Virus record (IMG/VR): IMGVR_UViG_3300017987_000001
Span: 124,001 to 188,000 of that record
DNA length: 64,000 nucleotides
Reading direction: 5' to 3' (one strand)
Under the pieces are notes generated by a model. It saw nothing but the letters and a program-made list of their open reading frames with translations, was not told the origin of the DNA and searched no databases. The position numbers and the translations under genes are program-made. The stretch's first letter is position 1, and the number at the start of each line of letters is the position of its first letter. Of this stretch, positions 41,463-55,715 are shown in pieces.

Positions 41463-41492
41463 TGTGGTATTCCTTTCACCCACGGGCAGTAG

Positions 41493-41732: not shown

Positions 41733-41745
41733 GACGGCGCTCCTT

Positions 41746-42096: not shown

Positions 42097-42120
42097 CTCT
42101 ATATTCCTTTCCACCCACGG

Positions 42121-42297: not shown

Positions 42298-42560
42298 GGT
42301 GACGTCCACTTCGACACTTCGCAGATCGCACAGTCGAGGTAGCCCGAGCCATCATACAGGTAGTTGAACAGGTAGATCACCTCGCGGACGATGTAGCGCG
42401 TACCGTCTGCGCCACGTCCACCAGCGGTGTCGATTACCCACTCGCCCACGCGCGGCGGCATCGGCAGCTCCATGACGAAGTCTGCGGAATTGGCATCATC
42501 GTCCTTCGTGCGATCGTATGCGAACTGCGACTTCGGGATGATGATGAACTCGATACGCAT
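42291..42560 (-). CDS. Small hypothetical protein (89 aa)
   Basis: Start MRIEF (RBS GGAGGG); PMPPRVGEW. Confidence 0.6.
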   Translation of the reverse strand: MRIEFIIIPKSQFAYDRTKDDDANSADFVMELPMPPRVGEWVIDTAGGRGADGTRYIVREVIYLFNYLYDGSGYLDCAICEVSKWTSPC

Positions 42561-42570
42561 GCGCCCTCCA

Positions 42571-42592
42571 ATTGTTGGACGCGTCCAACTAT
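42571..42592. promoter_or_regulatory. 22 bp palindrome copy 5 (ATTGTTGGACGCGTCCAACTAT)
   Basis: Near-perfect consensus; sits between a stop codon and the next RBS. Confidence 0.75.
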
Positions 42593-42780
42593 GCGACAAC
42601 GCACTCGCATTCGCAATCCATCGCGAGTTCGACCTTGAACGACCGGCGGCTGCGATCCTTCTCCAGAATGGACTTCAGCCGCTGCGCTTCCCGGTACAGC
42701 ATCTTCGGCCCGACGCACTGCACGATCTCCTTCGTGCGTCGATCGATGACGTGAACCATCCACTCTTCGTTCTCGGGCAT
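42589..42780 (-). CDS. Small hypothetical protein, paralogue of 42121-42297
   Basis: Start MPENEE; VIDRRT motif. Confidence 0.55.
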   Translation of the reverse strand: MPENEEWMVHVIDRRTKEIVQCVGPKMLYREAQRLKSILEKDRSRRSFKVELAMDCECECVVA

Positions 42781-42905
42781 CGCTCCATGTCCTTTCACAG
42801 TTGGCAGGGCTACCCACTGTAGCGCCCTCCAGATTCAAGAAAGTGGGCGTGCGCCGACAACCTTCCCGAAGCCGACGCACGCCCGTTCCCGTGGGTGGGG
42901 AACTG

Positions 42906-43500
42906 CTACAGTTGACGACAGTTCAGATTGTGAAGGATGGTCATTGCGTCGCTGACACGATCCCACGCATGCATGTCGTTGCGTGACGAGAATCGACTCC
43001 CGTCGCGTTTGAACGCGCTCTTTGTCAGCGCGTCCTTCACGATCGATATCGGCGCTGCCGAGAACCAGACCGTGATCTTGTTCTTGTCGTGGTGCTCGCG
43101 GAAGATGATGGCCTCGCGAGCGTTCCCGTTCGCCTTGACCACGGCAAGCGCGACTCCCTCACTGTAGTCGAAATCGTCCCACCAGCAGTCCGCGTCGGAC
43201 TCGCCGCTCTTGGCGTACACCTCCGACCAGTTGTGCCGAGCGAGTTCGCGAAGCAGCGGATCGATCGCGTAGGTGGCAATCGGAACCCACCAGTCGCCGG
43301 TGGCACTACTGTACTTGAAGCCGCACGTCTTGAGCACCTCGATGATCGCATTGGCCTTCAGCCAGAAGCGAACGATGATGCGCTCCTTCGTGCGGTAGAT
43401 CCCACAGTAGTTACCGCAGCGATGCAGCAGCACCGCATTGCTCTGGTTGATCGCGATGTTCCAGCTGCTGATGACCTCACCGATGTTCGGGGTCTTCGCT
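42906..43500 (-). CDS. Hypothetical protein with two internal repeats; start not identifiable
   Basis: Repeat I-x-V-x-F...LK..[GA]FK occurs twice; no clear ATG/RBS, so the 5' coordinate is approximate. Confidence 0.45.
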
Positions 43501-43522
43501 GCAGCCCCAGCCCCGGCTAGGG

Positions 43523-44041
43523 CTAGCGGTCGAAAGGGCGGACGGCGATCTTCTGCTTGTCGGGGTCGAACCCGCCCTCTTCCTTCGATTCGAGGATCGC
43601 CGCGCGGATCACCGCGTCCTCGGGGGTCTTGGCGACGACCTTCTTGGTGGGACCGACGGACGTGATGACGTCCTTCTCGCCGATGGTGCGCACTTCGTAC
43701 TCGAACGTCTGCATGCTCTTCTCCTCCCGCTTTCGCGGAGCGTGGATCTTCGGTGTAACCGCAGGGGCCGGTCGTGCCGGATTGACGCACATCGCAGTGA
43801 CGTCGACTTTGACCTCAATTGGGTAAAGCTTCTTCCCGTCGCTGTACTTCCGCGACGAGATCGACAAGGTCTTGTCGAAGGGGATGAGTTCGTCACTAGA
43901 CAGGTGTTGGTACGGATCTTCCTTCAGGCGGATCATGAAGTCGAACGGATCGTAGCCCGGGAAGAACTTGTGGAATGCCTGAATGAACGTCGTACCCGGC
44001 GGGACCATTTCCACACGCGGTTTCTTCTCGTCATGTGGCAT
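43523..44041 (-). CDS. Hypothetical protein with possible internal start at 43714
   Basis: Start MPHDEK (RBS GGAGG); second RBS GGGAGGAG before MQTFEY. Confidence 0.6.
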   Translation of the reverse strand: MPHDEKKPRVEMVPPGTTFIQAFHKFFPGYDPFDFMIRLKEDPYQHLSSDELIPFDKTLSISSRKYSDGKKLYPIEVKVDVTAMCVNPARPAPAVTPKIHAPRKREEKSMQTFEYEVRTIGEKDVITSVGPTKKVVAKTPEDAVIRAAILESKEEGGFDPDKQKIAVRPFDR

Positions 44042-44119
44042 GAATCCTCCAGCCAAAGTGGGAGCCTCTGCTGGAGCTTCGCTTACCAACCAGCACCGCG
44101 CTGGTTAGGTGGATGGTTT

Positions 44120-45532
44120 TCAGGCGTCGGACGTGCGCTTGGCTTTCTTCCTGCGCTTCGTCGTCGCCTTCTTGTTCGCCGCACTTCTGGCCTTGGCTTT
44201 CGCCGCCTTGCTCTCTTGCTGGCGTTCGACAGCCTGCATGACCAGATGGTGCGCCGCGTCTACGTACAGGTCGATGGCGTAACCGATGCCCTCCTTCTTC
44301 ACCAGATTCCGGACGGGCGTGAGGTTGCGGCCGTAGCGCCCACGCCGGTTCTCCGCAGGACCGGCGATGACGTGGGGGCCAGAATCGACACGTACGCGCA
44401 CTTCCCCGAGCGACTGCGGCACAACGAACTCGATCGGATAACCGAGCTGTTCGCCGATGAGCTGCTTAGCTTGCGTAAGGATGAACCACGACTGCACCTG
44501 AGCCAGTGCAAGTTCGAGGTTCCCTCCCAGCTTCGAGACCATCGCGGGGATGTCATTCGGATTATTGACCCGCTGAACGGGCCAAGGTCCGTAGAGAGCG
44601 GTGCCGGGCATGACCTTCTGCCCGGACCGCACGATGGGTTCGACGTATGGCAGGTCGAACCCCGTCCGCTCGGAAGCGATGCGATTCGCTTCCGCCGGGT
44701 CAAACGTGTACGTCTTCTCCTGATTCCCGTCGGTGACGGTCACGTCGAATCCATCCACTGACGCAACCGTGCCGACCATGTCGGCAGACATGTTCGGCAC
44801 ACCCGGAATCCCCCACCTGCCGGTGGAGGTGGCGCTGCTGATGCCGATCATCAGGCTGCGGCGGGAACGCGCGCAGTCTGCGAAGGTCTCGTCACTCGCG
44901 CGAAGCGTGAGCTTGCGCTTGGTGACGACGATGAAGTCCATAGGAGGCATCTCGGTGGTAGCTTCGACCCCGTTCTCCTTGACTTCTTCGAGCATCGCCA
45001 GCACCTTCCCGGCGAGCCGTCGCTCATCGTCCGTCGAGTCCTCCCCCGTGACGAGGCAGTACTTCCCGGACTCACGATCAGCTCGACGGGACATCCCGAG
45101 GGGCACTGAGTAGGTGATTTCCGACTGTCGCCTATAGTGCCCGTCTACGACGGTCCCCTTGAGACGCCGATCGCTCGACGCGCGAACGATCCAAGCGCCG
45201 CCGTTGTGCATCGTGCCGTTGCACAGTTTCCCGTCAGCTGAAAGGTGCCATGGATCCAGCTTGTGACGGGCGAAGTTCCTTCTCGTGGAGTAGTCGAGGT
45301 CCACAAGAGTGGTGACGGTCTCCATGGTGTCGACGGGGCGGTACTCCTCGTCTCCACGCAAAAGGAACTTGAACACTGCACGGTCTTCGGCCGATAGATC
45401 GTGCAAAACGGAGGGTCGCGGCTGGACGATCTCGTTCCAGAGTCCGCCCATGCGCTGCGATCGATCTCCGCAATTCTCGTCGAGAGGCCCGTGGAGCCTT
45501 TCGACAACCTTCATGAAGTCTGCGTGCTTCAA
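44120..45532 (-). CDS. Hypothetical protein, possible degenerate RNAP beta mid-region paralogue
   Basis: TTG start with RBS GGGGAG. RSLMIG...GTVASVDGFDVTV...TYTF...PIVRSGQKVMPGTAL parallels the beta RALMG-to-SBHM region. By-eye alignment only. Confidence 0.5.
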   Translation of the reverse strand: MKHADFMKVVERLHGPLDENCGDRSQRMGGLWNEIVQPRPSVLHDLSAEDRAVFKFLLRGDEEYRPVDTMETVTTLVDLDYSTRRNFARHKLDPWHLSADGKLCNGTMHNGGAWIVRASSDRRLKGTVVDGHYRRQSEITYSVPLGMSRRADRESGKYCLVTGEDSTDDERRLAGKVLAMLEEVKENGVEATTEMPPMDFIVVTKRKLTLRASDETFADCARSRRSLMIGISSATSTGRWGIPGVPNMSADMVGTVASVDGFDVTVTDGNQEKTYTFDPAEANRIASERTGFDLPYVEPIVRSGQKVMPGTALYGPWPVQRVNNPNDIPAMVSKLGGNLELALAQVQSWFILTQAKQLIGEQLGYPIEFVVPQSLGEVRVRVDSGPHVIAGPAENRRGRYGRNLTPVRNLVKKEGIGYAIDLYVDAAHHLVMQAVERQQESKAAKAKARSAANKKATTKRRKKAKRTSDA

Positions 45533-45597
45533 CAGACTCTCCCCTACTATGAAATAGCAGAGGCTCCCATTAATAGTAACGCGCTGGGAACGCGCAT

Positions 45598-45924
45598 TTA
45601 GCCCGTTTTGGGCTTGGGAATGAAGGGTACGAAGTGCCCCGAATCGTTGACCGTCGTGGCGTCAATTCCGACCTGCACAACCTCGCCATCCACCTCGAAT
45701 GACCCCACCGGAGCAAGGTTGCCCAGCCGCACGCGGTGGCCACGGAACGCGAAGGCATGCAGCTCCTCCGTAGCCTCCAGTACGTTGGACTTCAACGCCC
45801 GCTCGAAGGCCGAACGGTCACCGCACTCAAGGCACTGCGGCGGCTTGTCGGCTGCGTCAGGAATGATGATCAGCCAGAACGGTATCGGCTTCGTCTCCGC
45901 CTTCTTATCTGGTTCGTCGCTCAT
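45598..45924 (-). CDS. Hypothetical protein (108 aa)
   Basis: ORF track; ATGA overlap. Confidence 0.65.
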   Translation of the reverse strand: MSDEPDKKAETKPIPFWLIIIPDAADKPPQCLECGDRSAFERALKSNVLEATEELHAFAFRGHRVRLGNLAPVGSFEVDGEVVQVGIDATTVNDSGHFVPFIPKPKTG

Positions 45925-46184
45925 TGCGGCTTACCCTTCTTCGGCGCATCCAACGCAGGCTGCACGGGACGCGTACGCTGATCGACATCCACGGAGCCGG
46001 TCTTGCCGTTCACCGACAGGATGCCACGGAACACGATCGTGCCGTCGTTGCGTGCCACCTCGACGATGCCGATAGTCGCCTTGCCCTTCGGCTGGTAGAA
46101 CGTGGGTTCCAGCACGATCATGTCCTTCTTGATCTCCACATTCTTCGCCTCGATGCTACTGGGCGGCTTGATCGCCACTTTCAT
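45921..46184 (-). CDS. Hypothetical protein (87 aa)
   Basis: ORF track. Confidence 0.6.
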   Translation of the reverse strand: MKVAIKPPSSIEAKNVEIKKDMIVLEPTFYQPKGKATIGIVEVARNDGTIVFRGILSVNGKTGSVDVDQRTRPVQPALDAPKKGKPQ

Positions 46185-46806
46185 TGAGTTCTCCCATCTC
46201 TATCAGTCGTGCGCGCCCGCGAGCGACGATAGTCGGCTCCGGCGGCTGCACGGTCAGCGTAATCATCTCTGGTGCCGTCGTTGGATGCGGCAATCGCTTC
46301 AGGAATTCTTCACGTTCGAGATCTTCAGCCTCTCCCGGCTTGAAGATCGGATACGGCAGCATCTCCCGGTGTGTCTCTGCGACGAGCCGGGCAGACATGG
46401 TTGAGATGGTCCACACATCGATAACCTCGGGCCGAGGGTTCTCGACACCGACCATCCGCATAAACGGATCGCCGATCGGTGCCGCCATACGGCGCGGCAC
46501 ACAGAAGCCGCCATGCTTCGGGTGAACCATCTCAACCGACTCCAGCCAGCTACAGAATGCCGGATATGCCTGATCGTTCATGACATACAGACGAGACCCG
46601 AACGGCTGCGGCAGGTTGATGATCTCGAATCCCTGAAAGTCGTAGTACGTCAGCGTCACGTCCATCTTCGTGTCATTGACGAAGCGGCCAACGACGTCGA
46701 ACGTGATGCCGCCGTAGGTGTAGAGGGCCGCGTGCGTGAACGGCACGAAGCCCTCCTTCCGAGCCTCCAGCAACGAGCCGAGCAGTTCGAGCTTGTCTGT
46801 ACTCAC
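46156..46806 (-). CDS. Hypothetical protein (216 aa)
   Basis: ORF track; GTG start overlapping the upstream TAG. Confidence 0.65.
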   Translation of the reverse strand: MSTDKLELLGSLLEARKEGFVPFTHAALYTYGGITFDVVGRFVNDTKMDVTLTYYDFQGFEIINLPQPFGSRLYVMNDQAYPAFCSWLESVEMVHPKHGGFCVPRRMAAPIGDPFMRMVGVENPRPEVIDVWTISTMSARLVAETHREMLPYPIFKPGEAEDLEREEFLKRLPHPTTAPEMITLTVQPPEPTIVARGRARLIEMGELNESGDQAAQ

Positions 46807-47072
46807 TAGTGATTCTTTCTAGCTGCCTTTATCACCCTCATTGCAGCAGTGTAGCTGTACGGCTTTCCGTCAACGACCAGCATGGGGATCTGCTGGTTTA
46901 TCAAGCAGTGCATCGCCATGACATCAATACTGCGGTCCGTCCGCCACCCCTCGTGCGGCATACCGTAGTACTCGATGTCGTGCTTCTCGTACTCCAGCTT
47001 CATGCGCTTGAGCTTATCCTCAGCCGACGCACAAAGACCACAGTTCTTCTTTCCGTACAGGACGATCTGCAT
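46806..47072 (-). CDS. Glutaredoxin/NrdH-like thioredoxin-fold protein
   Basis: IVLYGKKNCGLC, QQIPMLVVDG. Confidence 0.8.
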   Translation of the reverse strand: MQIVLYGKKNCGLCASAEDKLKRMKLEYEKHDIEYYGMPHEGWRTDRSIDVMAMHCLINQQIPMLVVDGKPYSYTAAMRVIKAARKNH

Positions 47073-47114
47073 TTCATTTCCCCTTAACGGCGGAGTCTCA
47101 CCGCCGCAGTAGTT

Positions 47115-47146
47115 TGGCCGGTGCGGTATATATACCGCACCGGCCA
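47115..47146. repeat. Perfect 32 bp palindrome TGGCCGGTGCGGTATATATACCGCACCGGCCA
   Basis: Read directly; intergenic. Confidence 0.85.
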
Positions 47147-47153
47147 GTGCCCC

Positions 47154-47780
47154 CTACAGACCGAGACGGGTGCTCAGCGCAAGAGCGAATATGGCCATCT
47201 CTTCCGCGTCGTCCTCGTTCGGCACGGGTAAGCCAAAGCGCTTCGCGATCTTGTCGTATGGGATCTCGGGAACGTGCGGTCCCCGATACCCACAGATCAC
47301 ACGCGCAGGATCGAAGTAAATCGGGACATCAGGCTGCACCGCAGCCGCCGTGTGCCCGAACATCCAGTGGAGCGAGTACGGAAGCGAGCCGTTGGCGATC
47401 ATGTACTCGATGGCCATGATGCGCAGCGTCGCTTCCAGCCTGCAGCCACTGACGATGATCCGTGTCACCTTCGAAGGATCCGTGATGACCCCCGACTTGT
47501 TGAGGATGTAGTCGACGGCCATACGGCCACAGCCTACGCCCCCTTGCGAGAACGAGTTCTCTTCGTCGGGTGTGCCATCACGCTTGAGCGTAAGAACGCA
47601 GGCCGAGGTGATCGTGCCCGCCAGTGGGTGGGTCACGGTCTCGGCCTGCAGTTCAGCTTTGCGCTCGGCGATGTACTGCGCGATCTTCGCCGGATCCTTG
47701 TAGTTCTTGGGTGCCTTTACGTCTATGTACTCCTCCCAGTCGGGGACTGAGCGGAGCACTGCGCCCACGTAGTACCGCAT
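47154..47780 (-). CDS. PolB-type 3'-5' exonuclease-like protein, probably inactive
   Basis: KAPKNYKDPAKI...HPLAGTI resembles phage PolB-exo-like proteins; ExoI DxE absent. Confidence 0.5.
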   Translation of the reverse strand: MRYYVGAVLRSVPDWEEYIDVKAPKNYKDPAKIAQYIAERKAELQAETVTHPLAGTITSACVLTLKRDGTPDEENSFSQGGVGCGRMAVDYILNKSGVITDPSKVTRIIVSGCRLEATLRIMAIEYMIANGSLPYSLHWMFGHTAAAVQPDVPIYFDPARVICGYRGPHVPEIPYDKIAKRFGLPVPNEDDAEEMAIFALALSTRLGL

Positions 47781-48130
47781 GCCTTCTCGAATTCCTCCCT
47801 AGCCTCCTTCATGTAACGGGGCAGGTAGTAATCCCACCCCATTCGCGGCGTATGGCACGGTGCCTTCCCGCGCACCTGCGCATACACATTCAGGTAGGCC
47901 GAAATCTGGAAGCGGCGAACGGCAGCCTCAGACTGAACGTACGTGACGTCGTGCCTGTAGCCGTACTTCGACGGAGAGAGACGATCCACCTCCGCCTGCA
48001 GCCGTTCCCGGTCTTCCTTCGTCTTGCGCGGCATACGAAGCGCACGTTTCGCTTCCCGCTGTATGTCCGCAAGCTCCTTGATCTTCTGCTTCAGCGTCTG
48101 AATCCCACGACGATAGTCATCACGGTCCAT
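47723..48130 (-). CDS. Hypothetical basic protein (135 aa)
   Basis: ORF track; RBS GGAG. Confidence 0.6.
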   Translation of the reverse strand: MDRDDYRRGIQTLKQKIKELADIQREAKRALRMPRKTKEDRERLQAEVDRLSPSKYGYRHDVTYVQSEAAVRRFQISAYLNVYAQVRGKAPCHTPRMGWDYYLPRYMKEAREEFEKACGTTWAQCSAQSPTGRST

Positions 48131-48258
48131 CTTGAGTCTCCAATCGGTAGTACCTAATCAAATGGGTAATGAATTGGGTACTGGCGATCGGCGGACCGCG
48201 AGCCTATGGGGGATGTAGCTAGGTGAACTCCATGGCTTTCCTCCTTCCCGTGCCCCCG

Positions 48259-48927
48259 TTACGACTGATTCTGAACGTCCCCGTCGTCGTCATCCGCGCT
48301 CGACCCGGCCGTCCAGTCGATGGACTGCGCACTCGCGCCGCCACGGTATGCGCCGACATTGCTCGACATGCACTTCACGGCATGCGCGTAGTGATGCGCG
48401 TTGCCAGCACGGTACTTGACGATCCGGTCCATCGCGATACCCATGCCGCGCGCCTCGTCGAACGCTTCAGCACCCGCAGCGAGGAAGACGAACTGCCACT
48501 GGAACTGATTCGTCTGCGTGTCGATCATCTTCATGAGCTGATCGCGCTTGTACTCGTGACTGGAGTTCTCCTGCCCGTCGGTGATGATCGCCATCACAAC
48601 CTTGCTCGGGCGTTCCTCTTCGGGCTTCTCAGCCAGCCGCTTCCCGACCTCGTCGATCGTGCGTCCGACCGCATCCAGCAACGCCGTCATGCCGCCGGGC
48701 GTGTACGTGCTGGTGCTGAGACGCGGAACTTCCTTGATGGGCGCGCACTTGTGAACGATATCATACGCGGTATCGAACAGCGTCAACGTGAGCTGTGCCT
48801 CTCCGGGCAGCTTCTTCTGCTCGTCGAGGAACGTGTTGAACGCACCCATCGCATCGTCGCGAATCGTGGCCATCGATCCGGACTTGTCCATCACTACGAT
48901 GATCTCCGTCAGATTTGGCTTCGTCAC
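48259..48927 (-). CDS. von Willebrand factor A domain protein
   Basis: MIDAS VMDKSGSM, TALLDAVG, IITDGQEN; GTG start with RBS GAGGAG. Confidence 0.88.
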   Translation of the reverse strand: MTKPNLTEIIVVMDKSGSMATIRDDAMGAFNTFLDEQKKLPGEAQLTLTLFDTAYDIVHKCAPIKEVPRLSTSTYTPGGMTALLDAVGRTIDEVGKRLAEKPEEERPSKVVMAIITDGQENSSHEYKRDQLMKMIDTQTNQFQWQFVFLAAGAEAFDEARGMGIAMDRIVKYRAGNAHHYAHAVKCMSSNVGAYRGGASAQSIDWTAGSSADDDDGDVQNQS

Positions 48928-48928
48928 G

Positions 48929-49123
48929 TCACTCTCCTCTTGCCTCAGCCTGTATGTCACGAAGCTGCTCTTCGAGGCGATGAATAGCTTCGTCTGGGGT
49001 CACCCCCATTGCAGAATGGAAGCCCCAGTGCGCCTTCCACGCGCGGGCCTCGTACACGAACGTCAGCGACACGTTGTCGCGAAGCTTGTCCGCCAACATC
49101 TCGATAGCTATCACGACATTCAT
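48929..49123 (-). CDS. Small hypothetical protein (64 aa)
   Basis: Start MNVVIA (RBS AAAGGAG) just downstream of the tRNA. Confidence 0.6.
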   Translation of the reverse strand: MNVVIAIEMLADKLRDNVSLTFVYEARAWKAHWGFHSAMGVTPDEAIHRLEEQLRDIQAEARGE

Positions 49124-49135
49124 GATTCTCTCCTT

Positions 49136-49210
49136 TGGAACGTCCGGCGGGGGTCGAACCCGCATCTTGCGCCTTTAGAGAGCGCCGCACTCCCATTGTG
49201 CTACGGACGT
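49136..49210 (-). tRNA. tRNA with CUA anticodon (amber suppressor), CCA encoded
   Basis: Manual cloverleaf: ACGTCCG/CGGACGT acceptor, GCAC/GTGC D arm, GCGCT-CTCTAAA-GGCGC anticodon arm, GCGGG-TTCGACC-CCCGC T arm, U73, CCA; 75 nt. Confidence 0.93.
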
Positions 49211-49377
49211 TCCTCTTGTTTCTCCTCCATCGCGTCGCGCTTGAGCTTCGCGCCCAGCACAAACGAGCAGGACACGGATCCGAAGACCCCGAGCATGCGC
49301 GCGTAGATGTTGCCGGACAGTATTGCTGCGGTCGCACCCATTAGAATCATCGCAAGCAGCCAGCTCCTGCTATTCAT
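49201..49377 (-). CDS. Small 2-TM protein whose stop lies inside the tRNA
   Basis: Manual translation MNSRSWLLAMILMG...EEKQEERP*; below the ORF-track cutoff. Confidence 0.45.
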   Translation of the reverse strand: MNSRSWLLAMILMGATAAILSGNIYARMLGVFGSVSCSFVLGAKLKRDAMEEKQEERP

Positions 49378-50446
49378 CATCCAGTACCAGCATCTTGTTG
49401 AGCTGCGTGACCGGGTAGATGTTGCTGTCGATCTGAACGTTCATTGTCCCGCCCGCAAGTTGCGAGGGCTTGAAGTCTGCCCATACGTGCGGCCTATCAG
49501 TCAGGTACGGAGGGTACAGCTCCTCCGGACGCATGCCTTGTGGCTGGTCGTGCTCCGTGTTGATCCCGACTACGGTAGCAATCGGATAGTGGAACTGCAG
49601 CTGCTGCAGCGTGGCCAGCGATCGCACGAGCCGCGCAGGGCGTGGTTCGATCGTCTGCTCCTCGGCGATGAGCTGATCGAGATCTTCAATCACGAGCAGG
49701 CCAGATGGATTGAACTGGTCGGTAACTGAAGAGCGAAGTACCTCAACCAGCTGTCCGACCGTATCACCTTTGCCCCGCCAACCGCTCAGCGCAATCACCT
49801 TGCTCGCATGCACGTCTTCCTCGCCCGCCTTGCCCGTGATGGGGTGTCGGTCGTCTTCGCCAGCATGAAGCACGACGACACGCCCGCCCGCGCGCTCGTA
49901 TACCTTCGTGAAGAGCGCGAGGATAATGGGGAGTGCGGTCGAATGTGAGAAGATGGGGAAGATGTCCTCGTGCGTCATCCCGTTCTCGAACTTCCGATCG
50001 AGATCGAGCGGCAGCGGGACGGCCTTGCTCTTGATGCGCCCCGTGAGCTTCTTCATCCGGGCCTTACGCCCCTCGTCGCGCTCCAAAGCGATCTGAGCCT
50101 GCGCGTTGAGCCATGGCTGGAGCTTCTGGTTGAACTCGGCCAGCATGGGCGGGAAGTCGAACATCTTACCCGCCGCGTGCTGCTGTGCCTCGTACAGAAT
50201 GCCGACCATCATGGCCGATACGTCAGGCATCTCCGACGCGCGCATCGACGCCCAGTTGACGAGCCTATGTCCGAAGAGGGCTAACGCGGCCAGACGGCGG
50301 AGATCCGCGCTTTCCTCCATTGCCTTTTCGAGACGCTCTCCCGCCTCGTCGTGGAGCTTCATCCGCCGCTCCGCTTCCTTCTGCTGCTGCTCCTTCATCG
50401 CTGCCTGCAGCTTCGCGATGTCCACGTTCTGTGGAATCTGGGGCAT
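49370..50446 (-). CDS. Hypothetical protein with possible degenerate ATPase-like C-terminal domain
   Basis: Start MPQIPQ (RBS GGAGG); LLVIEDLDQ Walker B-like segment, no Walker A. Confidence 0.6.
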   Translation of the reverse strand: MPQIPQNVDIAKLQAAMKEQQQKEAERRMKLHDEAGERLEKAMEESADLRRLAALALFGHRLVNWASMRASEMPDVSAMMVGILYEAQQHAAGKMFDFPPMLAEFNQKLQPWLNAQAQIALERDEGRKARMKKLTGRIKSKAVPLPLDLDRKFENGMTHEDIFPIFSHSTALPIILALFTKVYERAGGRVVVLHAGEDDRHPITGKAGEEDVHASKVIALSGWRGKGDTVGQLVEVLRSSVTDQFNPSGLLVIEDLDQLIAEEQTIEPRPARLVRSLATLQQLQFHYPIATVVGINTEHDQPQGMRPEELYPPYLTDRPHVWADFKPSQLAGGTMNVQIDSNIYPVTQLNKMLVLDDE

Positions 50447-51080
50447 AAAACGCCTCCAATACTCTAGGGTCGACGGTGTCGAGGAACTGGTCGAACCTGA
50501 ACCCGACAACCGAATGCTCCGGCAAATGAATCTTGTGCTTCTTCACCTCAACGACGCGCTCGTCGATGCGGAAGATCATGCTGGGGGATGGGCGGTAGCC
50601 GAACATGGTGAACTCGGCCAGTGTAGCCGTAGTGACCCAGCCAAGCAATAGTCCGCGATTGCGCTTTGTCACGAGAAATGGCCGCCTCGGGACGGCCATC
50701 GCTTCGTCGTAGCATTGCGCCCAAAACTTCATCCAGTCATGATTCGGGTCGACGTTCTGGAGTACGCCAAGCACGTCGTATGTCTTGTACGACTTGAATT
50801 CGAAGCAGAACGCATCCAGCAGCGGCTTGCCAAGCGGGTCGGTATACTTCATGTCACCAAACTCGTTGGCCGTGGACTTCCCGCTCCGTCTGCGTCGGGA
50901 TGTTGCGCGTGAGCCGGACCCGGACGTCCTCCAGTAGATATCGTCACGTTTGCCCTCAGTCCACCACAGGCTCATCTGTACGCAGCGGTCGCGTTCGAAT
51001 TGTCCACCTTTCGCCGCACCGCCGCCGGGTCTCATCTTCCTACCCTTCTTCTTTCTCTTCGCCACGGTCGTCTTCCTCAT
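50265..51080 (-). CDS. Holliday junction resolvase-like PD-(D/E)XK nuclease
   Basis: KGGQFER...RTSGSG...FGD...FEFKS...FWAQC...LVTKRNR; the 3' end overlaps the next gene. Confidence 0.75.
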   Translation of the reverse strand: MRKTTVAKRKKKGRKMRPGGGAAKGGQFERDRCVQMSLWWTEGKRDDIYWRTSGSGSRATSRRRRSGKSTANEFGDMKYTDPLGKPLLDAFCFEFKSYKTYDVLGVLQNVDPNHDWMKFWAQCYDEAMAVPRRPFLVTKRNRGLLLGWVTTATLAEFTMFGYRPSPSMIFRIDERVVEVKKHKIHLPEHSVVGFRFDQFLDTVDPRVLEAFYAPDSTERGHREAAGSDEGAAAEGSGAADEAPRRGGRASRKGNGGKRGSPPSGRVSPLRT

Positions 51081-51267
51081 TGAGCGGGACAGGCGGCTTG
51101 ATCTTGCGGGAGAAGTACTCCTCCCGCGCCTTCAGCTGCTCGTCTGCGGCCTGCTTCGCCTTCCGCTCCTGATAGGTCCGCGCGTCCCTGCAGCTGGGAC
51201 ACTGGCCGTGATTGCGGCAATGCGGGTCATTCCGCTTGCACTTGTTGATCTTACGCCACCGACTCAC
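51040..51267 (-). CDS. Small basic Cys/His protein (75 aa)
   Basis: C...HCRNHGQCPSC. Confidence 0.55.
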   Translation of the reverse strand: MSRWRKINKCKRNDPHCRNHGQCPSCRDARTYQERKAKQAADEQLKAREEYFSRKIKPPVPLNEEDDRGEEKEEG

Positions 51268-51946
51268 GGAACCCCTCCAACAGGTAGTGCGTCATGAGAC
51301 AGTCGAACCCTGCGTCGTGCGCAGCATTGAGATCGAGGTTGTACTTCTTGTCCACCTCGTACGTCGTTACTGCGAACTCAAGCCGCCACTTCACGCGACT
51401 TCGCGTGTGGCGTATCCGATTGAAGTAGCTCTCCAGCGATTCGTGCGGTCCGATCATCGACTTCATCTGAGCTGCTTTGAAAATGCAGCCCGTATCGATG
51501 ATCTCACCCGGCTTAAACGCGAAGTCCATTCCCTGCCGCTCGAACTCGCGGGAGATGAAAGGACCATCGAAGGATAGAGCGTTGTGCCCGACATACATAC
51601 AACGACCGCTGCGGTATAGCTGCAGCAGCCTGAGTATGCGGGGGTACAGCTCGTCGGGTTCTTCGCCTTCCTTTTGGAGGATGTCATCCGTGATCCCCGT
51701 CACTTCCATGGCCTGCCCCTTCATCGTCCCACGGGGACGACGAACGTAGTGCGCGGCGTTCGCTACGACCTTACGCTCGCGCACGGCGGCATAACCAAAC
51801 TGCACGATTACGTCCGGCTTCTTGCCTTCCGGCGGGTTGTAGTGAAACCCGCTCGTTTCGATATCGATGACGAGGTAGTCGTCGGGAAGACTGCCGCCCG
51901 GGCAGCGGGCCGCAATCCCAGCAATGATCTTCTGTGTGTCATTCAT
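51251..51946 (-). CDS. DEDDh 3'-5' exonuclease (DnaQ-like)
   Basis: VIDIETSG, GHNALSFD, AHDAGFD; start MNDTQK. Confidence 0.9.
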   Translation of the reverse strand: MNDTQKIIAGIAARCPGGSLPDDYLVIDIETSGFHYNPPEGKKPDVIVQFGYAAVRERKVVANAAHYVRRPRGTMKGQAMEVTGITDDILQKEGEEPDELYPRILRLLQLYRSGRCMYVGHNALSFDGPFISREFERQGMDFAFKPGEIIDTGCIFKAAQMKSMIGPHESLESYFNRIRHTRSRVKWRLEFAVTTYEVDKKYNLDLNAAHDAGFDCLMTHYLLEGFRESVA

Positions 51947-52421
51947 CAGATGATCCTGCTCTACCCAAGCATCGAAGGATCCGGTCGACCTCACTTTGTA
52001 CGTCCTCCAGCGAGGGCGTTTGGCCCTCCTTCTCCGGCTGTACGGATTCGAACCAGATCGGCATCTCGGAGAACATCGCGCACATCAGCAACTCGGAGAT
52101 GAGCGCACGAACTCCTGCGCGTGGACCGTCCTCGAACAAGTCCCTGAACCAACCCTCCGGCTCTCGCCGTACCACTGGATCCTCACGCAGCGCATTCAAG
52201 AAGCGTGCGAGATCCTTGATGAACGACTCCAGCTCTTCGCGAAGTCGCTCGTCAGGTACGTGACAGTCTATGCACCGGTCGATCATCATCCCACGAATGT
52301 GGTCCGTGGTGATGTCCTGCCCCAGCATGTGGAGCGCGTTATGAATCAACCGTGGCATAGCCCAAATGAGATCCCGATCCGGGTTGTAGAGCCGCTTATC
52401 GGCCCCGCGCATTTGAAGCAT
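51939..52421 (-). CDS. Hypothetical protein (160 aa)
   Basis: ORF track; RBS TAGGAG. Confidence 0.65.
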   Translation of the reverse strand: MLQMRGADKRLYNPDRDLIWAMPRLIHNALHMLGQDITTDHIRGMMIDRCIDCHVPDERLREELESFIKDLARFLNALREDPVVRREPEGWFRDLFEDGPRAGVRALISELLMCAMFSEMPIWFESVQPEKEGQTPSLEDVQSEVDRILRCLGRAGSSDE

Positions 52422-52430
52422 CTGGTTCTC

Positions 52431-53306
52431 CTAGCCCATTCGCTCGCGCGCCCAGTGCGCGCGAACATCCTTTGTCTGACAAGAGATGCACGCCTTCGCG
52501 TTCTTCCGCTCGGGATCGAACGCCGCGTGATCCCTATTACACAGGTCACACCGTTTGATGATCCACGTGTACCGATGTGTGCCGAGCATGCACTCCGAGT
52601 AGCCGACCGGACACGTGTGACAGCGTTGGTTGTAGTGCCGAACGCACGGACCTGCGCGCGCCTTCCGTAGACGCTTGTTGTAGCGCTTGTGCTGATCAAG
52701 GCAGTGCATCTCGTCGATGTCGAGCGTGCCGTCGTCCTTCTGCACTATGTAGGCGAGGAACCACATGCCGACCAGCTCGCTGTGGAGCGGTCTCATATCG
52801 TTCATGTTCCACGCCAGCTCGTTGGCGAGCATCCACATCACGAGCTTGTAGGAAACGGACTTCAGCAACTCACGTCCGGACATCGCGCCCGCACTGATCA
52901 TCACGGTCATGTTGATGCGCGTCCTGTTGTTGATCACCCGACCAAAGCGCATGTCCGTGATCGTCACAGGGTACCAGCCCGGCTCGCCTAGCGTGCCCGT
53001 GATCGGTTTGCCGTCGCGTAGCAATGAGAGACCGCCCGCGAGCTTCGTCGCGATCTGATCACCTACACGACCCGTCAGCTCCTGCCCGATGAATTCGAGC
53101 AGCGATTGGCGCAGCGCAAGCTCATGATCGTCGTCCTCGTCGTCCAGCTTGAGCATGCGCATGAAGAGCGCGACCAGCTCGTCGAGCTGGTCTTCGTCTA
53201 TGATCGTTCCGTAGTAGGACGTGAGTCGCAGCGCGATCTTCTTGCGCCACTGCCTGACACGACCGAGGTCGAATGCAGGCACACGCACCGCTTCTTGGCG
53301 AATCAC
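52431..53306 (-). CDS. Hypothetical protein with Cys-rich C-terminus
   Basis: GTG start after RBS GAGGAGG; CHTC, CDLC, CISC. Confidence 0.7.
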   Translation of the reverse strand: MIRQEAVRVPAFDLGRVRQWRKKIALRLTSYYGTIIDEDQLDELVALFMRMLKLDDEDDDHELALRQSLLEFIGQELTGRVGDQIATKLAGGLSLLRDGKPITGTLGEPGWYPVTITDMRFGRVINNRTRINMTVMISAGAMSGRELLKSVSYKLVMWMLANELAWNMNDMRPLHSELVGMWFLAYIVQKDDGTLDIDEMHCLDQHKRYNKRLRKARAGPCVRHYNQRCHTCPVGYSECMLGTHRYTWIIKRCDLCNRDHAAFDPERKNAKACISCQTKDVRAHWARERMG

Positions 53307-53327
53307 CGCTTCCTCCTCGACTTTTAC

Positions 53328-53356
53328 GTTGTACCAGCAGTTAGGGTGCTTGACAA
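53328..53356 (-). promoter_or_regulatory. Sigma70-type promoter TTGTCA-N17-TACAAC (extended -10 TG)
   Basis: Read directly; follows a terminator and precedes an RBS. Confidence 0.7.
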
Positions 53357-53385
53357 GATCAAAACTATGGGGCCGCTCTGCGGGC

Positions 53386-53424
53386 AAAAAGAAAGACGGG
53401 GCGGTTGCGGAGGCCGCCCCGTCT
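53386..53424 (-). terminator. Intrinsic terminator
   Basis: AGACGGGGCGG/CCGCCCCGTCT 11 bp stem plus TTCTTTTT. Confidence 0.85.
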
Positions 53425-53465
53425 GCGGAGGAATCGGCGACAGTGGGGGTCGCCTTTTCGGGAAG

Positions 53466-53981
53466 CTAGGTGGGAGGTACGAAGTCAGTCAGCGAGGCTT
53501 TCGCTCCTCGCAGGAATGCCTTGGCGATATCGAGAAGCACCTTGGTCTCCTCACTCGGCTCGACCTTCGGTAGCTTGATGTCTTGGTCCATCTTCATCAA
53601 CAAAATCCGCGACAGGCTCTTCGCGCCCGGAAGGAATGCAGCGTCTTCGCCGGTAAGCCGCTCCTCCAGCTTCGTGTGGACGAGGTCCGTAAGCGAGACG
53701 AATCCGCCGTCACCGGGTGAGCCGGTGATGTTCGCTTCGAGCGTTTCGATCGCAGTGAGATACTTCTGTGCGTTCTTCGCATCGTCCTTGTTCGCTACAA
53801 AGTACGTGAAGACCGCAAGGTTGCCCGCCATCTCGGCATTCGAGACCGCCTGTGCGGGATCGTCGATGTCGATGTTCGGGCAACCAGCTATCGGCAATAG
53901 TAAGACCAACGCCAGCAAGCTGGTTAGTATCGCACGCAAAACTCGCCTCCTTTCGCTTGTAGTGGTACCACGAACCACCAC
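53466..53981 (-). CDS. Lipoprotein
   Basis: Basic N-terminus, hydrophobic core, lipobox IAG-C. Confidence 0.7.
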   Translation of the reverse strand: MVVRGTTTSERRRVLRAILTSLLALVLLLPIAGCPNIDIDDPAQAVSNAEMAGNLAVFTYFVANKDDAKNAQKYLTAIETLEANITGSPGDGGFVSLTDLVHTKLEERLTGEDAAFLPGAKSLSRILLMKMDQDIKLPKVEPSEETKVLLDIAKAFLRGAKASLTDFVPPT

Positions 53982-54025
53982 AAGATCAAGTGTATTCTGG
54001 GTCAGAAAACTAAGTCTAGCGGTAG

Positions 54026-54400
54026 CTAGAACCTATGACTTGGCATCGGCGGCAGGTCGTCTTCCTCGACGATCTCGGCCACCATGGATTGTGTCTCTGC
54101 TTCCAGAGCGGCAGCATCCTGCTCTTCCCGCTCGTATTCCCCACTGGCGCGCTTCTCTTTCTCGCGCTTGAGTATCTCCGCTACACGGTGCTGGTAGTTG
54201 GCAAGCTCTTCTTTGGTAGGTGTGAACAGCTTCCCGCCGATCCATACTGCCGCCCGCTCATCGTAGTCCTGAATGTCGAGCAGCAGCGAGAGCGCAGCAC
54301 TCCTGACGGCCTCCGTTCCGCCAGTCATGTACGCCCACAGCACGCGCGCAGCCTTCTCACCGGTATACGCGAACTCGATGAGCACTGCGTCGTCACTCAC
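54026..54400 (-). CDS. Hypothetical acidic protein (124 aa)
   Basis: ORF track; GTG start overlapping the upstream gene. Confidence 0.65.
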   Translation of the reverse strand: MSDDAVLIEFAYTGEKAARVLWAYMTGGTEAVRSAALSLLLDIQDYDERAAVWIGGKLFTPTKEELANYQHRVAEILKREKEKRASGEYEREEQDAAALEAETQSMVAEIVEEDDLPPMPSHRF

Positions 54401-54725
54401 GGGTACCGTTCCCTTTCACAACACGAATCAGCTTCTTCACCGCAGTCAGGATCCTCGGCTCGCCAGCCTGTTCATCGGCTTCGAACGGCCGATTCTCATC
54501 CGACCCGGCGTACTGCACATTGATCTTGTTGGAGGATGGCCACCAGTTCAGGATGTACTCACGCGCCCTGAACTGATGGCCTCCTGAGATATCACGACAC
54601 TCGATCCCGTACTTCTGACAGAGTGCCTGAAGGATTGGCAGCCACTTCTGGAGTCGCTTCTTCCGCTCACGGCGGCGCTCGCGACGCTCCAGCCTCGCTG
54701 TCTTGTATTGATTGGTTGCCTGCAT
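54393..54725 (-). CDS. Hypothetical basic protein (110 aa), probably leaderless
   Basis: ATG lies 7 nt after the -10 box; no RBS. Confidence 0.65.
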   Translation of the reverse strand: MQATNQYKTARLERRERRRERKKRLQKWLPILQALCQKYGIECRDISGGHQFRAREYILNWWPSSNKINVQYAGSDENRPFEADEQAGEPRILTAVKKLIRVVKGNGTRE

Positions 54726-54731
54726 ATGAGA

Positions 54732-54760
54732 GTTGTACTGCGTGCAACCAGCGACGTCAA
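54732..54760 (-). promoter_or_regulatory. Sigma70-type promoter TTGACG-N17-TACAAC
   Basis: Read directly. Confidence 0.75.
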
Positions 54761-55198
54761 CTACTCACGTTGCGAGCGCGGGACGAGCGAGAACTCCGTC
54801 GCTACGAGATCGAACCCCGCAATGAAGTCCTCCACGACGATGTACTTGCGTGGGGTTCCGTTGCTGGAATTCGTCGGGTCGGGTATCGCATCTCCGCGCA
54901 TGAGCTGCTCGTACAGCTTCAGCGGATCGTGCCCGAGCGCCTTGGCGAGATTGATGAACGACTTCGCGCGCATTGCATCCTTGCGCGAGTAGTTCTCGAT
55001 CGTCGACCGGCCGACTCCCGCCTTCTTCGCGAACGCGCCCATCGTCATGCCCTTCTTCGCATTGTGCTGCTTGATGAGCGTAAGAAGTGCGGGCATCAGC
55101 TCGCCCATGTACAGATCCACGCCCCAAGGCTGTCGTCCGTGCAGTACCTCTGCCAGCACGTGTGCCTCGTGAGCGTACGTCTTGTCCTTCGTCGCCAT
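54761..55198 (-). CDS. XRE-family HTH DNA-binding protein
   Basis: Start MATKDK; GMTMGAFAKKAGVGRSTIENY...LAKALG. Confidence 0.8.
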   Translation of the reverse strand: MATKDKTYAHEAHVLAEVLHGRQPWGVDLYMGELMPALLTLIKQHNAKKGMTMGAFAKKAGVGRSTIENYSRKDAMRAKSFINLAKALGHDPLKLYEQLMRGDAIPDPTNSSNGTPRKYIVVEDFIAGFDLVATEFSLVPRSQRE

Positions 55199-55223
55199 AC
55201 GTCCTCCTCGTTCTGTTGAGCTG

Positions 55224-55706
55224 CTATGCGACCTTGTACTTCGCGAACGCCTTGGTGATCGCTGCATCGAGATCTTCCAATGCGAGGATCATTCGGCGGT
55301 GCTTCAGAAGCTCGTCCTTCGTAGCATCCGTCTTCAACTGCTTCGAGTTGCGCTTGCTGTAATCGCGGTTACCCATGCCGTTACGCAGCGAGGACTTGGC
55401 GCGACGCAGGCGCTTCTGGATATCGCGACTCACTTCATTGAGCGTCGGCGTCGTCGTGTAGCCGTGCTTCGTGTGCACGACCACGCCGAGAGAGCGACGG
55501 ATATCCGTCAGCACCTTGCCCAGCGGCCTGTCGACACTATCACGCGCGAGCGCAGCGATGAGCGCCGCCTTCTCGTGATACTGTGCCGTGGCCATGTGGT
55601 TTTCGAGCTTCTGGTGCGGCTTGTCCGGGAGTCGGAACGTGCGAGCACGCCCTACGTACGTGATTGCTTCCTTCTTCCGCTTCGGCGCTGTTTTCGTCTT
55701 CACCAT
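55224..55706 (-). CDS. Hypothetical basic protein (160 aa)
   Basis: ORF track; RBS AGGAG. Confidence 0.65.
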   Translation of the reverse strand: MVKTKTAPKRKKEAITYVGRARTFRLPDKPHQKLENHMATAQYHEKAALIAALARDSVDRPLGKVLTDIRRSLGVVVHTKHGYTTTPTLNEVSRDIQKRLRRAKSSLRNGMGNRDYSKRNSKQLKTDATKDELLKHRRMILALEDLDAAITKAFAKYKVA

Positions 55707-55715
55707 TTCTTTCTC

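What the first reader, a model, noticed from the sequence alone, without database searches (positions are those of the whole stretch)
49136..49210. Amber-suppressor tRNA in a genome that still uses TAG as a frequent stop
Seen: a canonical cloverleaf with anticodon CUA (49176-49178). More than 25 called genes end in TAG by my count, and no long gene needs TAG readthrough, so this is not a TAG-recoded genome. The A1-U72 pair and CUCUAAA loop are one change from a Trp-type CUCCAAA loop, but U73 is atypical for Trp, so the amino acid is unresolved. Inference: partial, possibly timed, readthrough, or interference with host termination or defence.
Basis: partly seen in the sequence, partly recalled or inferred. 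Interest (0 to 1): 0.68.

Follow-up and report, generated by a model that had tools for sequence, protein, structure and literature searches.

The report
Conserved amber-suppressor tRNA in TAG-stopping phage
A 208-kb phage from marine sediment and several distant relatives all keep a well-formed tRNA that reads the stop codon TAG, although they still end about four genes in ten with TAG, so the tRNA is kept by selection for some kind of stop readthrough and not for a change of genetic code.

Summary
ARAGORN and Rfam (63 bits) find one canonical tRNA at 49136-49210 on the minus strand. It has anticodon CUA, A1-U72, U73 and an encoded CCA.

The window is part of a complete 207,857-bp phage genome. 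That genome carries 38 other tRNAs in one distant cluster, covering all 20 amino acids. It has no release factor or synthetase gene.

The genome uses the standard code:
- 93% is coding.
- Stops are TAG 98, TGA 89, TAA 62.
- The tail sheath, spike and fibre genes end in TAG.
- No gene needs TAG readthrough.

The new finding is that the tRNA is conserved. Four further distinct tRNAs with CUA sit at the same syntenic place in related metagenomic contigs, whose flanking proteins are 37-78% identical. Across the five tRNAs, 13 of 21 stem pairs show compensatory changes. CUA never varies, but the acceptor-end identity positions do.

This rules out sequencing error and a neutral mutant. Selection seems to act on reading UAG, not on inserting one particular residue.

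The amino acid, the efficiency and the benefit remain inferred. My best guess is partial readthrough by a host-charged tRNA made with early or middle genes. Host sabotage is unlikely, because the phage itself relies on TAG.

The parts
49136..49210 (-). tRNA gene with anticodon CUA. Canonical class I cloverleaf with A1-U72, U73 and an encoded CCA.
   Evidence: ARAGORN. Rfam tRNA 63 bits. Sequence read. Four further distinct CUA tRNAs at the same syntenic place in relatives.
49176..49178 (-). Anticodon CUA (TAG on the + strand) inside the loop CUCUAAA: U33, A37, and an A36-A37-A38 run.
   Evidence: Invariant in all five orthologues. No variant in contigs of 4 runs.
49201..49377 (-). Small ORF of 58 aa with a hydrophobic stretch. 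Its ATG overlaps the TAG of the gene upstream. Its own TAG is nucleotides 8-10 of the tRNA.
   Evidence: Read. Weak positive coding score of 12.9. No family match. Whether it is a real gene is not settled.
49370..50446 (-). Gene B, 358 aa, no known family, ends in TAG. It is the conserved upstream neighbour of the tRNA.
   Evidence: Homologues at 37-59% identity. Synteny gene B then tRNA-CUA in L176, L177, L179-L181, L183 and L186.
50265..51035 (-). Gene A, a PDDEXK_15 endonuclease. Its last 180 nt overlap gene B in another frame. Ends in TAG.
   Evidence: Pfam PF24608, E 2.2e-8. Frame-wise coding scores. The same family sits upstream of gene B in relatives.
51251..51994 (-). DEDD exonuclease (RNase_T family; PHROG 'DNA polymerase exonuclease subunit'). 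Part of the same conserved gene string.
   Evidence: PF00929 at the same place in relatives.
48929..49123 (-). 64-aa ORF that starts 14 nt after the tRNA's CCA, behind the ribosome-binding site AAGGAGAG.
   Evidence: Sequence. No family over its cut-off.
48259..48960 (-). vWA-domain (YegL-like) gene downstream of the tRNA.
   Evidence: phrog_7371, E 1.5e-55. 1384 homologues, some carrying PF00092. It lies directly after the tRNA-CUA in L183 and L186.
36686..58252 (-). Block of small replication, recombination and unknown genes around the tRNA in which 27 of 42 genes end in TAG.
   Evidence: best run of 40 genes holds 26 TAG, permutation p about 0.018. Glutaredoxin-like, HTH, PDDEXK and exonuclease genes. 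UvsX-like recombinase just beyond the block.

Best explanation
This is a genuine amber-suppressor-type tRNA that selection maintains in a jumbo phage using the standard genetic code.

Shown:
- It is a canonical tRNA with anticodon CUA and an encoded CCA.
- It lies inside a co-directional string of replication and recombination genes, far from the phage's main tRNA cluster.
- Divergent related phages keep it at the same place, with compensatory stem changes and an invariant CUA.
- TAG is a true and frequent terminator in these phages.
- The phage carries no synthetase or release factor.

Inferred:
- The tRNA is cut out of the polycistronic early or middle transcript by host RNase P and 3' processing enzymes.
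- A host synthetase charges it. In this lineage the body is Trp-like, but it lacks both main TrpRS determinants, C35 and G73. The residue is therefore more likely Gln, Lys or Gly than Trp.
- It competes with RF1, so a fraction of ribosomes read through UAG to the next stop.
- The acceptor-end identity positions differ between orthologues while CUA does not. The selected property is therefore probably reading UAG as such, either at a few specific sites or as relief for ribosomes waiting at UAG. It is not the insertion of one residue and not a code change.
For: - tRNA and anticodon.
- Complete genome with 38 other tRNAs, 37 found by ARAGORN plus a weak tRNA-Tyr, all 22 kb or more away.
- No close paralogue among the phage's own tRNAs.
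- Standard code: 93% coding, TAG 98 of 249 stops. No excess of in-frame genes after TAG, and every such gene has its own start.
- Tail sheath, spike, fibre and a virion protein end in TAG.
- Orthologous C-termini coincide where TAG is replaced by TGA or TAA.
- Conservation: gene B homologues, syntenic contigs, and CUA tRNAs in L176, L177, L179, L180, L181, L183 and L186.
- Across the five distinct tRNAs, 13 of 21 pairs are compensatory, 103 of 105 cells are paired, identity falls to 63%, U73 is present in 4 of 5, and pair 1-72 is A-U twice and G-C three times.
- Body affinities differ: Trp for the window and L177, Arg-like for L183, Gly-like or mixed for L186.
- No RF-1 domain, no aaRS of seven Pfam families and no CCA-adding enzyme.
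- Identical contigs in 4 runs.
Against: - Neither expression nor charging was observed. No RNA run holds the stretch.
- No sign that the genome has adapted to suppression. TAG-ended genes run on for a median of 31 codons to the next stop, longer than after TGA (16) or TAA (21). The next stop is TAG as often as after other stops. The +4 base shows only a mild C bias.
- No conserved in-frame extension follows TAG in the roughly 15% of the genome that relatives cover.
- A relative with 48% GC keeps the tRNA but uses TAG for only 1 of 9 stops. Relatives without the tRNA at this locus still use TAG for 36-41% of stops. TAG use and the tRNA are therefore not coupled.
- U73 together with U35 may make the tRNA a poor substrate for any host synthetase.
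Confidence: 0.55

Rival explanations
1. Partial code change, as in crAss-like, Lak and other code-15 phages. A few late or lysis genes would carry in-frame TAG, and the tRNA, made earlier, would switch them on.
For: - The tRNA lies in a replication and recombination block, not among structural genes. Suppressor genes of recoded phages likewise lie in standard-code regions (Borges et al., bioRxiv 10.1101/2021.08.26.457843).
- Fifteen gene pairs are in frame across a TAG.
Against: - Coding density is already 93% under the standard code.
- Gaps after TAG fall in frames 0, 1 and 2 as 24, 21 and 30, which is uniform.
- Every in-frame downstream ORF has a start, mostly with a Shine-Dalgarno site.
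- TAG ends tail sheath, spike and fibre genes.
- TAG is not depleted, whereas the published route to recoding starts from TAG depletion at low GC.
- No RF2 gene.
Confidence: 0.07
2. A host-directed or counter-defence tool. The suppressor would extend host proteins that end in TAG, or defeat a host or rival element that depends on UAG termination.
For: - It is conserved without any visible use inside the phage.
- Authors who met suppressor tRNAs in standard-code phages have raised host takeover as one possibility (phiKp24, PMC8386662).
Against: - The phage ends 39% of its own genes in TAG, more than the roughly one in five that I recall as typical of bacteria. This is my own knowledge and was not tested here. 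The tool would therefore hit the phage at least as hard as the host.
- The host is unknown.
- No defence or anti-defence gene was recognised next to the tRNA.
Confidence: 0.15
3. A neutral or decaying spare copy. A redundant Trp-type tRNA mutated from CCA to CUA, lost G73, is barely charged and is simply tolerated.
For: - The body is Trp-like.
- A canonical tRNA-Trp(CCA) with G73 exists in the main cluster.
- U73 together with U35 removes both main TrpRS determinants. This rests on established identity rules and is my own knowledge.
- The genome shows no adaptation to suppression.
Against: - Five distinct sequences at the syntenic site all keep CUA and a perfect cloverleaf, while flanking proteins have diverged to 37-78% identity. 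13 of 21 pairs carry compensatory changes.
- All invariant tRNA positions and the encoded CCA are kept.
Confidence: 0.05
4. A non-translational role. The tRNA fold would serve as an RNase P processing site that splits the operon transcript, or as a decoy for a host anticodon nuclease.
For: - The gene is wedged between ORFs. The upstream ORF's stop lies inside the tRNA, and the next ORF's ribosome-binding site starts right after the CCA.
- In L186 a GGAGG also follows the tRNA closely.
- No sigma-70-like promoter or terminator lies nearby.
Against: - A mere processing signal would not hold the anticodon fixed at CUA over five diverged copies, nor keep U33, a purine at 37 and an encoded CCA.
- No known anticodon nuclease targets CUA tRNAs (my own knowledge).
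Confidence: 0.1

Closest known systems
Suppressor tRNA(CUA) of TAG-recoded (code 15) phages: crAss-like, Lak and other gut phage clades
   Same: Both are phage-encoded, have anticodon CUA, lie outside the structural genes and depend on host synthetases.
   Different: Those phages have low GC, few TAG stops and in-frame TAG in late and lysis genes, and sometimes carry RF2. Here GC is 60%, TAG is the commonest stop, no in-frame TAG was found and there is no release factor.
Sporadic suppressor tRNAs in standard-code phages. Examples: Klebsiella jumbo phage phiKp24 (tRNA-Sup-TTA), a standard-code Agate phage with a TGA suppressor, and the uncultured huge phage LR756511 with a tRNA-CUA.
   Same: Each is a suppressor-type tRNA in a phage that still uses the matching stop codon, with no known function. 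In 50 kb around its tRNA-CUA, LR756511 is 88% coding under the standard code and ends 17 of 85 genes in TAG.
   Different: Those are single observations, read either as a step before recoding or left open. Here the tRNA is conserved across a diverged lineage and coexists stably with heavy TAG use.
E. coli su7 (supU), the amber suppressor derived from tRNA-Trp
   Same: Both have a Trp-type body with A1-U72 and a CCA-to-CUA change. Loop CUCUAAA is one base from CUCCAAA.
   Different: From my own knowledge, su7 keeps G73 and is charged mainly by GlnRS. This tRNA has U73, so neither TrpRS nor GlnRS finds its usual discriminator. su7 is a laboratory mutant of a host gene, whereas this is a natural, conserved phage gene.
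tRNA-Pyl (the label ARAGORN prints for any CUA anticodon)
   Same: Only the anticodon CUA.
   Different: This tRNA has the canonical G18G19, the T loop UUCGACC, two nucleotides between the acceptor and D stems, a 7-nt D loop, a 5-bp anticodon stem and a 5-nt variable loop. From my own knowledge, tRNA-Pyl lacks these canonical features.

Membership tests
Canonical elongator tRNA (Rfam RF00005) | Score above the family's gathering threshold over the full cloverleaf model | tested here: met
   63 bits against 29, model positions 1-71 of 71. ARAGORN agrees.
Canonical elongator tRNA (Rfam RF00005) | Stems maintained by compensatory changes in related sequences | tested here: met
   Five syntenic orthologues: 13 of 21 pairs with double changes, 103 of 105 cells standard pairs.
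Canonical elongator tRNA (Rfam RF00005) | Invariant nucleotides U8, A14, G18G19, U33, G53-C61, T54-Psi55-C56 and A58, and a 3' CCA | tested here: met
   All are present in the sequence, and the CCA is encoded.
Amber suppressor tRNA | Anticodon CUA in a 7-nt loop with U33 and a purine at 37 | tested here: met
   Loop CUCUAAA. CUA is invariant in five orthologues.
Amber suppressor tRNA | Expressed and aminoacylated | not testable with these tools
   No RNA run holds the stretch. Charging needs a bench test.
Amber suppressor tRNA | Causes readthrough of UAG in vivo | not testable with these tools
   Needs an amber reporter or proteomics.
Suppressor tRNA of a stop-codon-recoded (code 15) phage | Genes with in-frame TAG, seen as broken genes or low coding density under the standard code | tested here: not met
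   93% coding. Frames after TAG are uniform and every downstream ORF has its own start. Orthologous C-termini end at TAG, TGA or TAA alike.
Suppressor tRNA of a stop-codon-recoded (code 15) phage | TAG rare or absent as a terminator | tested here: not met
   TAG ends 98 of 249 genes, including tail sheath, spike and fibre genes.
Suppressor tRNA of a stop-codon-recoded (code 15) phage | Accessory code-change genes (RF2, synthetase), present in some members | tested here: not met
   No match to PF00472, PF00749, PF00579, PF00152, PF00587, PF02091 or PF01406 in the complete genome.
Bacterial tRNA-Trp | Anticodon CCA and discriminator G73, the main TrpRS determinants (established knowledge) | tested here: not met
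   Anticodon CUA and U73.
Bacterial tRNA-Trp | A1-U72 and overall body similarity to Trp tRNAs | tested here: met
   A1-U72. The best full-length hits of the window and L177 tRNAs in phage records are tRNA-Trp(CCA). One Trp tRNA (LR756501) shares the acceptor pairs A1-U72, C2-G71 and G3-C70 and the D arm. Bacterial tRNAs with the same D arm are Gly 72, Trp 34 and Asn 9, so the D arm alone does not decide.
tRNA-Pyl | Non-canonical fold: 6-bp anticodon stem, 3-nt variable loop, small D loop without G18G19, and one nucleotide between the acceptor and D stems | tested here: not met
   The window tRNA is canonical in all four respects.
tRNA-Pyl | pylS and pylBCD genes in the genome | not tested
   No search was made with Pyl-specific families.

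The most novel reading that the evidence does not exclude
A lineage of standard-code jumbo phages, most of the sampled members high in GC and rich in TAG stops, stably keeps an amber suppressor whose amino-acid identity is not conserved. Selection would act on readthrough itself. Two examples: freeing ribosomes that wait at UAG when host RF1 is scarce or attacked, or turning down early operons as the tRNA builds up. This would be a use of suppressor tRNAs that is neither a code change nor a step towards one.
Probability: 0.3. Interest if true: 0.8.

Novelty: new variant of a known kind. Interest (0 to 1): 0.6.

Why it matters
Phage suppressor tRNAs are currently read as tools of stop-codon recoding or as its forerunners. 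The published route starts with loss of the stop codon at low GC.

Here the opposite state is stable. The genome has 60% GC, TAG is its commonest stop, and the CUA tRNA is conserved across diverged relatives. If the tRNA is active, termination at UAG in these infections is deliberately leaky. That raises a testable question about what a virus gains from readthrough without recoding.

The five natural CUA tRNAs have different acceptor ends. They also form a ready-made set for asking which synthetases charge natural suppressors.

Tried and rejected
- **Tyr replacement idea.** ARAGORN's default run found no tRNA-Tyr, which suggested the CUA tRNA might stand in for Tyr. Rejected: a weak class II tRNA-Tyr(GTA) lies at genome 206949-207031 (Rfam 27 bits; ARAGORN finds it only at a relaxed threshold).
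- **Recent paralogue of a cluster tRNA.** Rejected: the best identity to any of the phage's own tRNAs is at background level.
- **TAG abundance explained by TAGGAG stop/Shine-Dalgarno overlaps.** Only 9 of 98 cases.
- **Shared motif around TAG stops.** None found.
- **Late genes avoiding TAG (a timing model).** Rejected: tail genes end in TAG.
- **TAG use tied to the tRNA.** Rejected by relatives.
- **Searches that found nothing useful:**
  - Megablast of the locus against phage records.
  - Exact tRNA patterns in IMG/VR and JGI metagenomes, which returned only the source contig.
  - The RNAP beta' piece in IMG/VR.
  - vWA relatives at 47% identity, which are low-GC phages without the tRNA.
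- **Isotype from the D arm in bacterial genomes.** Unresolved: Gly, Trp and Asn are equally near outside the pattern.
- **Sigma-70 promoter and terminator scan near the tRNA.** Nothing on the gene strand.
- **No DNA could be fetched** for the two closest relatives' contigs (P0002/P0007 and P0009). They show a gap of about 100 nt where the tRNA would be.
- **No other genetic code** was used in any tool.

Full report
**What is at the coordinates.** ARAGORN reports one tRNA in the 64-kb window, at 49136-49210 on the minus strand, with anticodon cta. It prints 'tRNA-Pyl' only because of that anticodon. Rfam's tRNA model matches 49139-49210 over its full length at 63 bits, against a gathering score of 29. 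Read from the sequence, the molecule is a textbook class I tRNA:
- a perfect 7-bp acceptor stem starting with A1-U72
- U8 and A9
- a 4-bp D stem and a 7-nt D loop with G18G19
- a 5-bp anticodon stem closed by U31-G39
- the loop CUCUAAA
- a 5-nt variable loop
- a 5-bp T stem and the T loop UUCGACC
- discriminator U73 and an encoded CCA

**The genome around it.** The window is bases 124001-188000 of a 207,857-bp virus record with a 123-bp terminal repeat, 59.7% GC and an estimated completeness of 100%. It occurs in sediment and seawater metagenomes. Contigs from four runs cover 47117-52000 without a single difference, at a depth of about 11-12. Some of these runs may be the source or duplicates, so this rules out an assembly slip but says nothing about other populations.

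The phage carries 38 more tRNAs. ARAGORN's default run finds 37 of them; the 38th is a weak class II tRNA-Tyr. All lie in one cluster spanning the record's ends (195-207.8 kb and 0-2.2 kb). Together they cover all 20 amino acids. The CUA tRNA stands alone, 22 kb from the cluster, and is not a close copy of any cluster tRNA.

Other genes:
- PHROG matches show pieces of a multisubunit RNA polymerase, a tail sheath, a baseplate wedge protein, and tail spike and fibre proteins. The phage is therefore a contractile-tailed jumbo phage.
- The nearest deposited phages are only about 30% identical in the polymerase piece.
- The tRNA's neighbours are a DEDD exonuclease, a PDDEXK nuclease, an unknown 358-aa protein (gene B), a vWA protein and a glutaredoxin-like protein, with a UvsX-like recombinase further on. 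This is a replication and recombination block.

**Is the genome recoded? No.** A simple codon-usage gene caller of my own gives 249 genes covering 93% of the genome under the standard code. Stops are TAG 98, TGA 89 and TAA 62. In the window they are 35, 28 and 16. These proportions equal what base composition alone predicts (37.5: 37.5: 25, my arithmetic). Off-frame stop triplets inside genes, by contrast, are 77% TGA and only 13% TAG. TAG is therefore clearly not avoided as a terminator.

Further evidence that TAG terminates:
- TAG ends the tail sheath, the tail spike, a tail fibre and a virion protein gene.
- Non-overlapping gaps after TAG put the next gene in frames 0, 1 and 2 at 24, 21 and 30, which is uniform. 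Every in-frame downstream ORF has a start codon within a few codons, usually with a Shine-Dalgarno site.
- In orthologue pairs with a related phage, the proteins end at the same residue whether the stop is TAG, TGA or TAA.

The complete genome has no RF-1 domain, no synthetase of seven Pfam families and no CCA-adding enzyme.

**The tRNA is conserved.** This is the main new result.
- A word search with gene B, the gene directly upstream, found four homologues at 37-59% identity.
- Their contigs keep the same order: exonuclease, PDDEXK nuclease, gene B, and often a small ORF or one extra gene.
- ARAGORN finds a tRNA with anticodon cta at the same spot in L176, in L177, L179, L180 and L181 (one phage seen in several samples), and in L183.
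- A search with the downstream vWA protein added L186. That contig has 48% GC and again shows gene B, tRNA-CUA, vWA.
- The two closest relatives' contigs could not be fetched, but each shows a gap of about 100 nt at that place.
- More distant vWA-bearing contigs lack the tRNA there.

The five distinct tRNAs are 63-83% identical. Of 105 stem cells, 103 are standard pairs, and 13 of 21 pairs show changes on both sides. The D-stem pair 12-23 is A-U, G-C or U-A. The anticodon CUA, U33 and the encoded CCA never change. It also makes a neutral, recently mutated copy very unlikely.

**Which amino acid? Unresolved, and possibly not the same in all lineages.** Against 50,697 phage records:
- The window tRNA and the L177 type match tRNA-Trp(CCA) genes best, up to 82% identity over 66 nt.
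- One Trp tRNA of a huge phage (LR756501) even shares the acceptor pairs A1-U72, C2-G71 and G3-C70 and the D arm.
- L183 matches Arg tRNAs best. L186 matches Gly and mixed isotypes. L176 matches nothing clearly.

Among the five:
- Pair 1-72 is A-U twice and G-C three times.
- Pair 3-70 flips.
- The discriminator is U in four and A in one.

By the established identity rules (my own knowledge), U35 and U73 remove both main TrpRS determinants. U73 also departs from the G73 that GlnRS prefers. U73 with C2-G71 and G3-C70 resembles Gly tRNAs. Bacterial tRNAs with the same D arm are Gly(UCC), Trp and Asn in that order, and are equally distant elsewhere in the molecule. I therefore leave the residue open between Gln, Lys, Gly and Trp. 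Because the anticodon is fixed while the identity positions drift, I infer that reading UAG matters more than what is inserted.

**What it does not seem to be tuned for.**
- TAG-ended genes run on for a median of 31 codons to the next in-frame stop, longer than after TGA (16) or TAA (21).
- The next stop is TAG in 26% of cases, no less than after other stops.
- The base after TAG is C in 35 of 98 cases, a mild bias only.
- No motif surrounds TAG stops.
- No in-frame extension after TAG is conserved between the window and the L177/L178 phage.
- TAG stops are concentrated around the tRNA: 27 of 42 genes in window 36.7-58.3 kb, with a permutation p of about 0.018 for the best run. The related high-GC phage shows the same, with TAG 14 of 29.
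- However, L186 keeps the tRNA with only 1 TAG stop in 9. Contigs without the tRNA at the locus still use TAG for 36-41% of stops.

Heavy TAG use is therefore a property of the high-GC members of this group and is not tied to the tRNA.

**Most likely mechanism.** The gene has no sigma-70-like promoter or terminator of its own. It is wedged between ORFs: a possible 58-aa ORF ends at the UAG formed by tRNA nucleotides 8-10, and the next ORF's ribosome-binding site begins right after the CCA. I infer four steps:
1. The tRNA is transcribed with the replication and recombination genes.
2. Host RNase P and 3' processing enzymes release it.
3. A host synthetase charges it.
4. It competes with RF1, so some ribosomes pass UAG.

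Laboratory bacteria and their phages tolerate amber suppressors well (my own knowledge). Coexistence with many TAG stops is therefore not a paradox in itself.

The benefit is unknown. The evidence favours readthrough as such, either at a few sites not yet seen or as relief for ribosomes waiting at UAG. It argues against a code change, against a neutral relic and against a weapon aimed at host termination, which would strike the phage's own genes at least as hard.

**Comparison with what is known.** Phage suppressor tRNAs are well known in TAG- or TGA-recoded gut phages. There they go with low GC, depleted stops and in-frame stops in late genes. Isolated suppressor tRNAs in standard-code phages have been noted and left unexplained:
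- phiKp24
- a standard-code Agate phage
- the deposited huge phage LR756511, as I found. In 50 kb around its tRNA-CUA it is 88% coding and ends 17 of 85 genes in TAG.

The present case belongs to that second, poorly understood kind. It adds two things: conservation across a diverged lineage, and stable coexistence with TAG as the commonest stop. I rate it a new variant of a known kind.

Noticed in passing
L175:5325-5401, L175:5403-5480 and L175:15406-15483 (genome 195325-195480 and 205406-205483, minus strand): Three tRNAs with Leu anticodons (UAA, CAA, UAG) are only 77-78 nt long with a short variable loop and A73. They are class I in shape, whereas bacterial tRNA-Leu is class II. The phage also has two normal long-arm Leu tRNAs.
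   Followed up: partly
L175:16949-17031 (genome 206949-207031, minus strand): A class II tRNA-Tyr(GTA) with two mismatches in the acceptor stem (U4.C69, A5.C68). It scores 27 bits, below the Rfam threshold, and ARAGORN misses it at default settings. It may be weakened or decaying.
   Followed up: partly
window 50265-50446, minus strand: The PDDEXK nuclease gene runs 180 nt into gene B in another frame. Its coding signal stops where gene B's begins. Gene B has its own GGAGG and ATG. Just before that ATG is a TTTTAT run on which a +1 slip would join the two frames. The L177 orthologue overlaps by only 21 nt.
   Followed up: partly
window 42576-42587 and 57155-57166; also genome 82443: The perfect palindrome TGGACGCGTCCA occurs three times, twice directly after a TAG stop in the window. 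The half-site TTGGACGCG occurs 22 times in the genome, mostly on the gene strand. It may be an operator, promoter or terminator element of the phage.
   Followed up: partly
window 3628-5490 and 2350-3618, minus strand: A 620-aa piece of a multisubunit RNA polymerase beta' ends in TAG. An in-frame 422-aa ORF follows after TAGGAGCGCGAAATG. The phage thus has split polymerase subunits of the jumbo-phage kind. Its nearest relatives are Vibrio and Salmonella jumbo phages at about 30% identity.
   Followed up: partly
window 44120-58252 versus L177 and L178: Orthologous genes keep the same stop codon in 15 of 21 pairs, although their proteins are only 25-67% identical. Chance would give about a third. 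Part of this may come from stop/start overlaps and from TAGGAG ribosome-binding sites.
   Followed up: partly
window 48259-48960, minus strand: The vWA (YegL-like) protein next to the tRNA has 1384 homologues at E below 1e-20, many on contigs of 50-480 kb. It appears to be a widespread jumbo-phage gene of unknown role.
   Followed up: no
window 47073-47153 and 53388-53465, minus strand: Long GC-rich hairpins follow two TAG stops. One has a TATATATA loop. The other is followed by a T run and looks like an intrinsic terminator that the simple scan did not list.
   Followed up: no
L190:24589-24662 (LR756511.1, about 179.6 kb): A deposited 595-kb uncultured phage also has a tRNA with anticodon CUA. 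The 50 kb around it looks standard-coded, with TAG ending 17 of 85 genes.
   Followed up: partly
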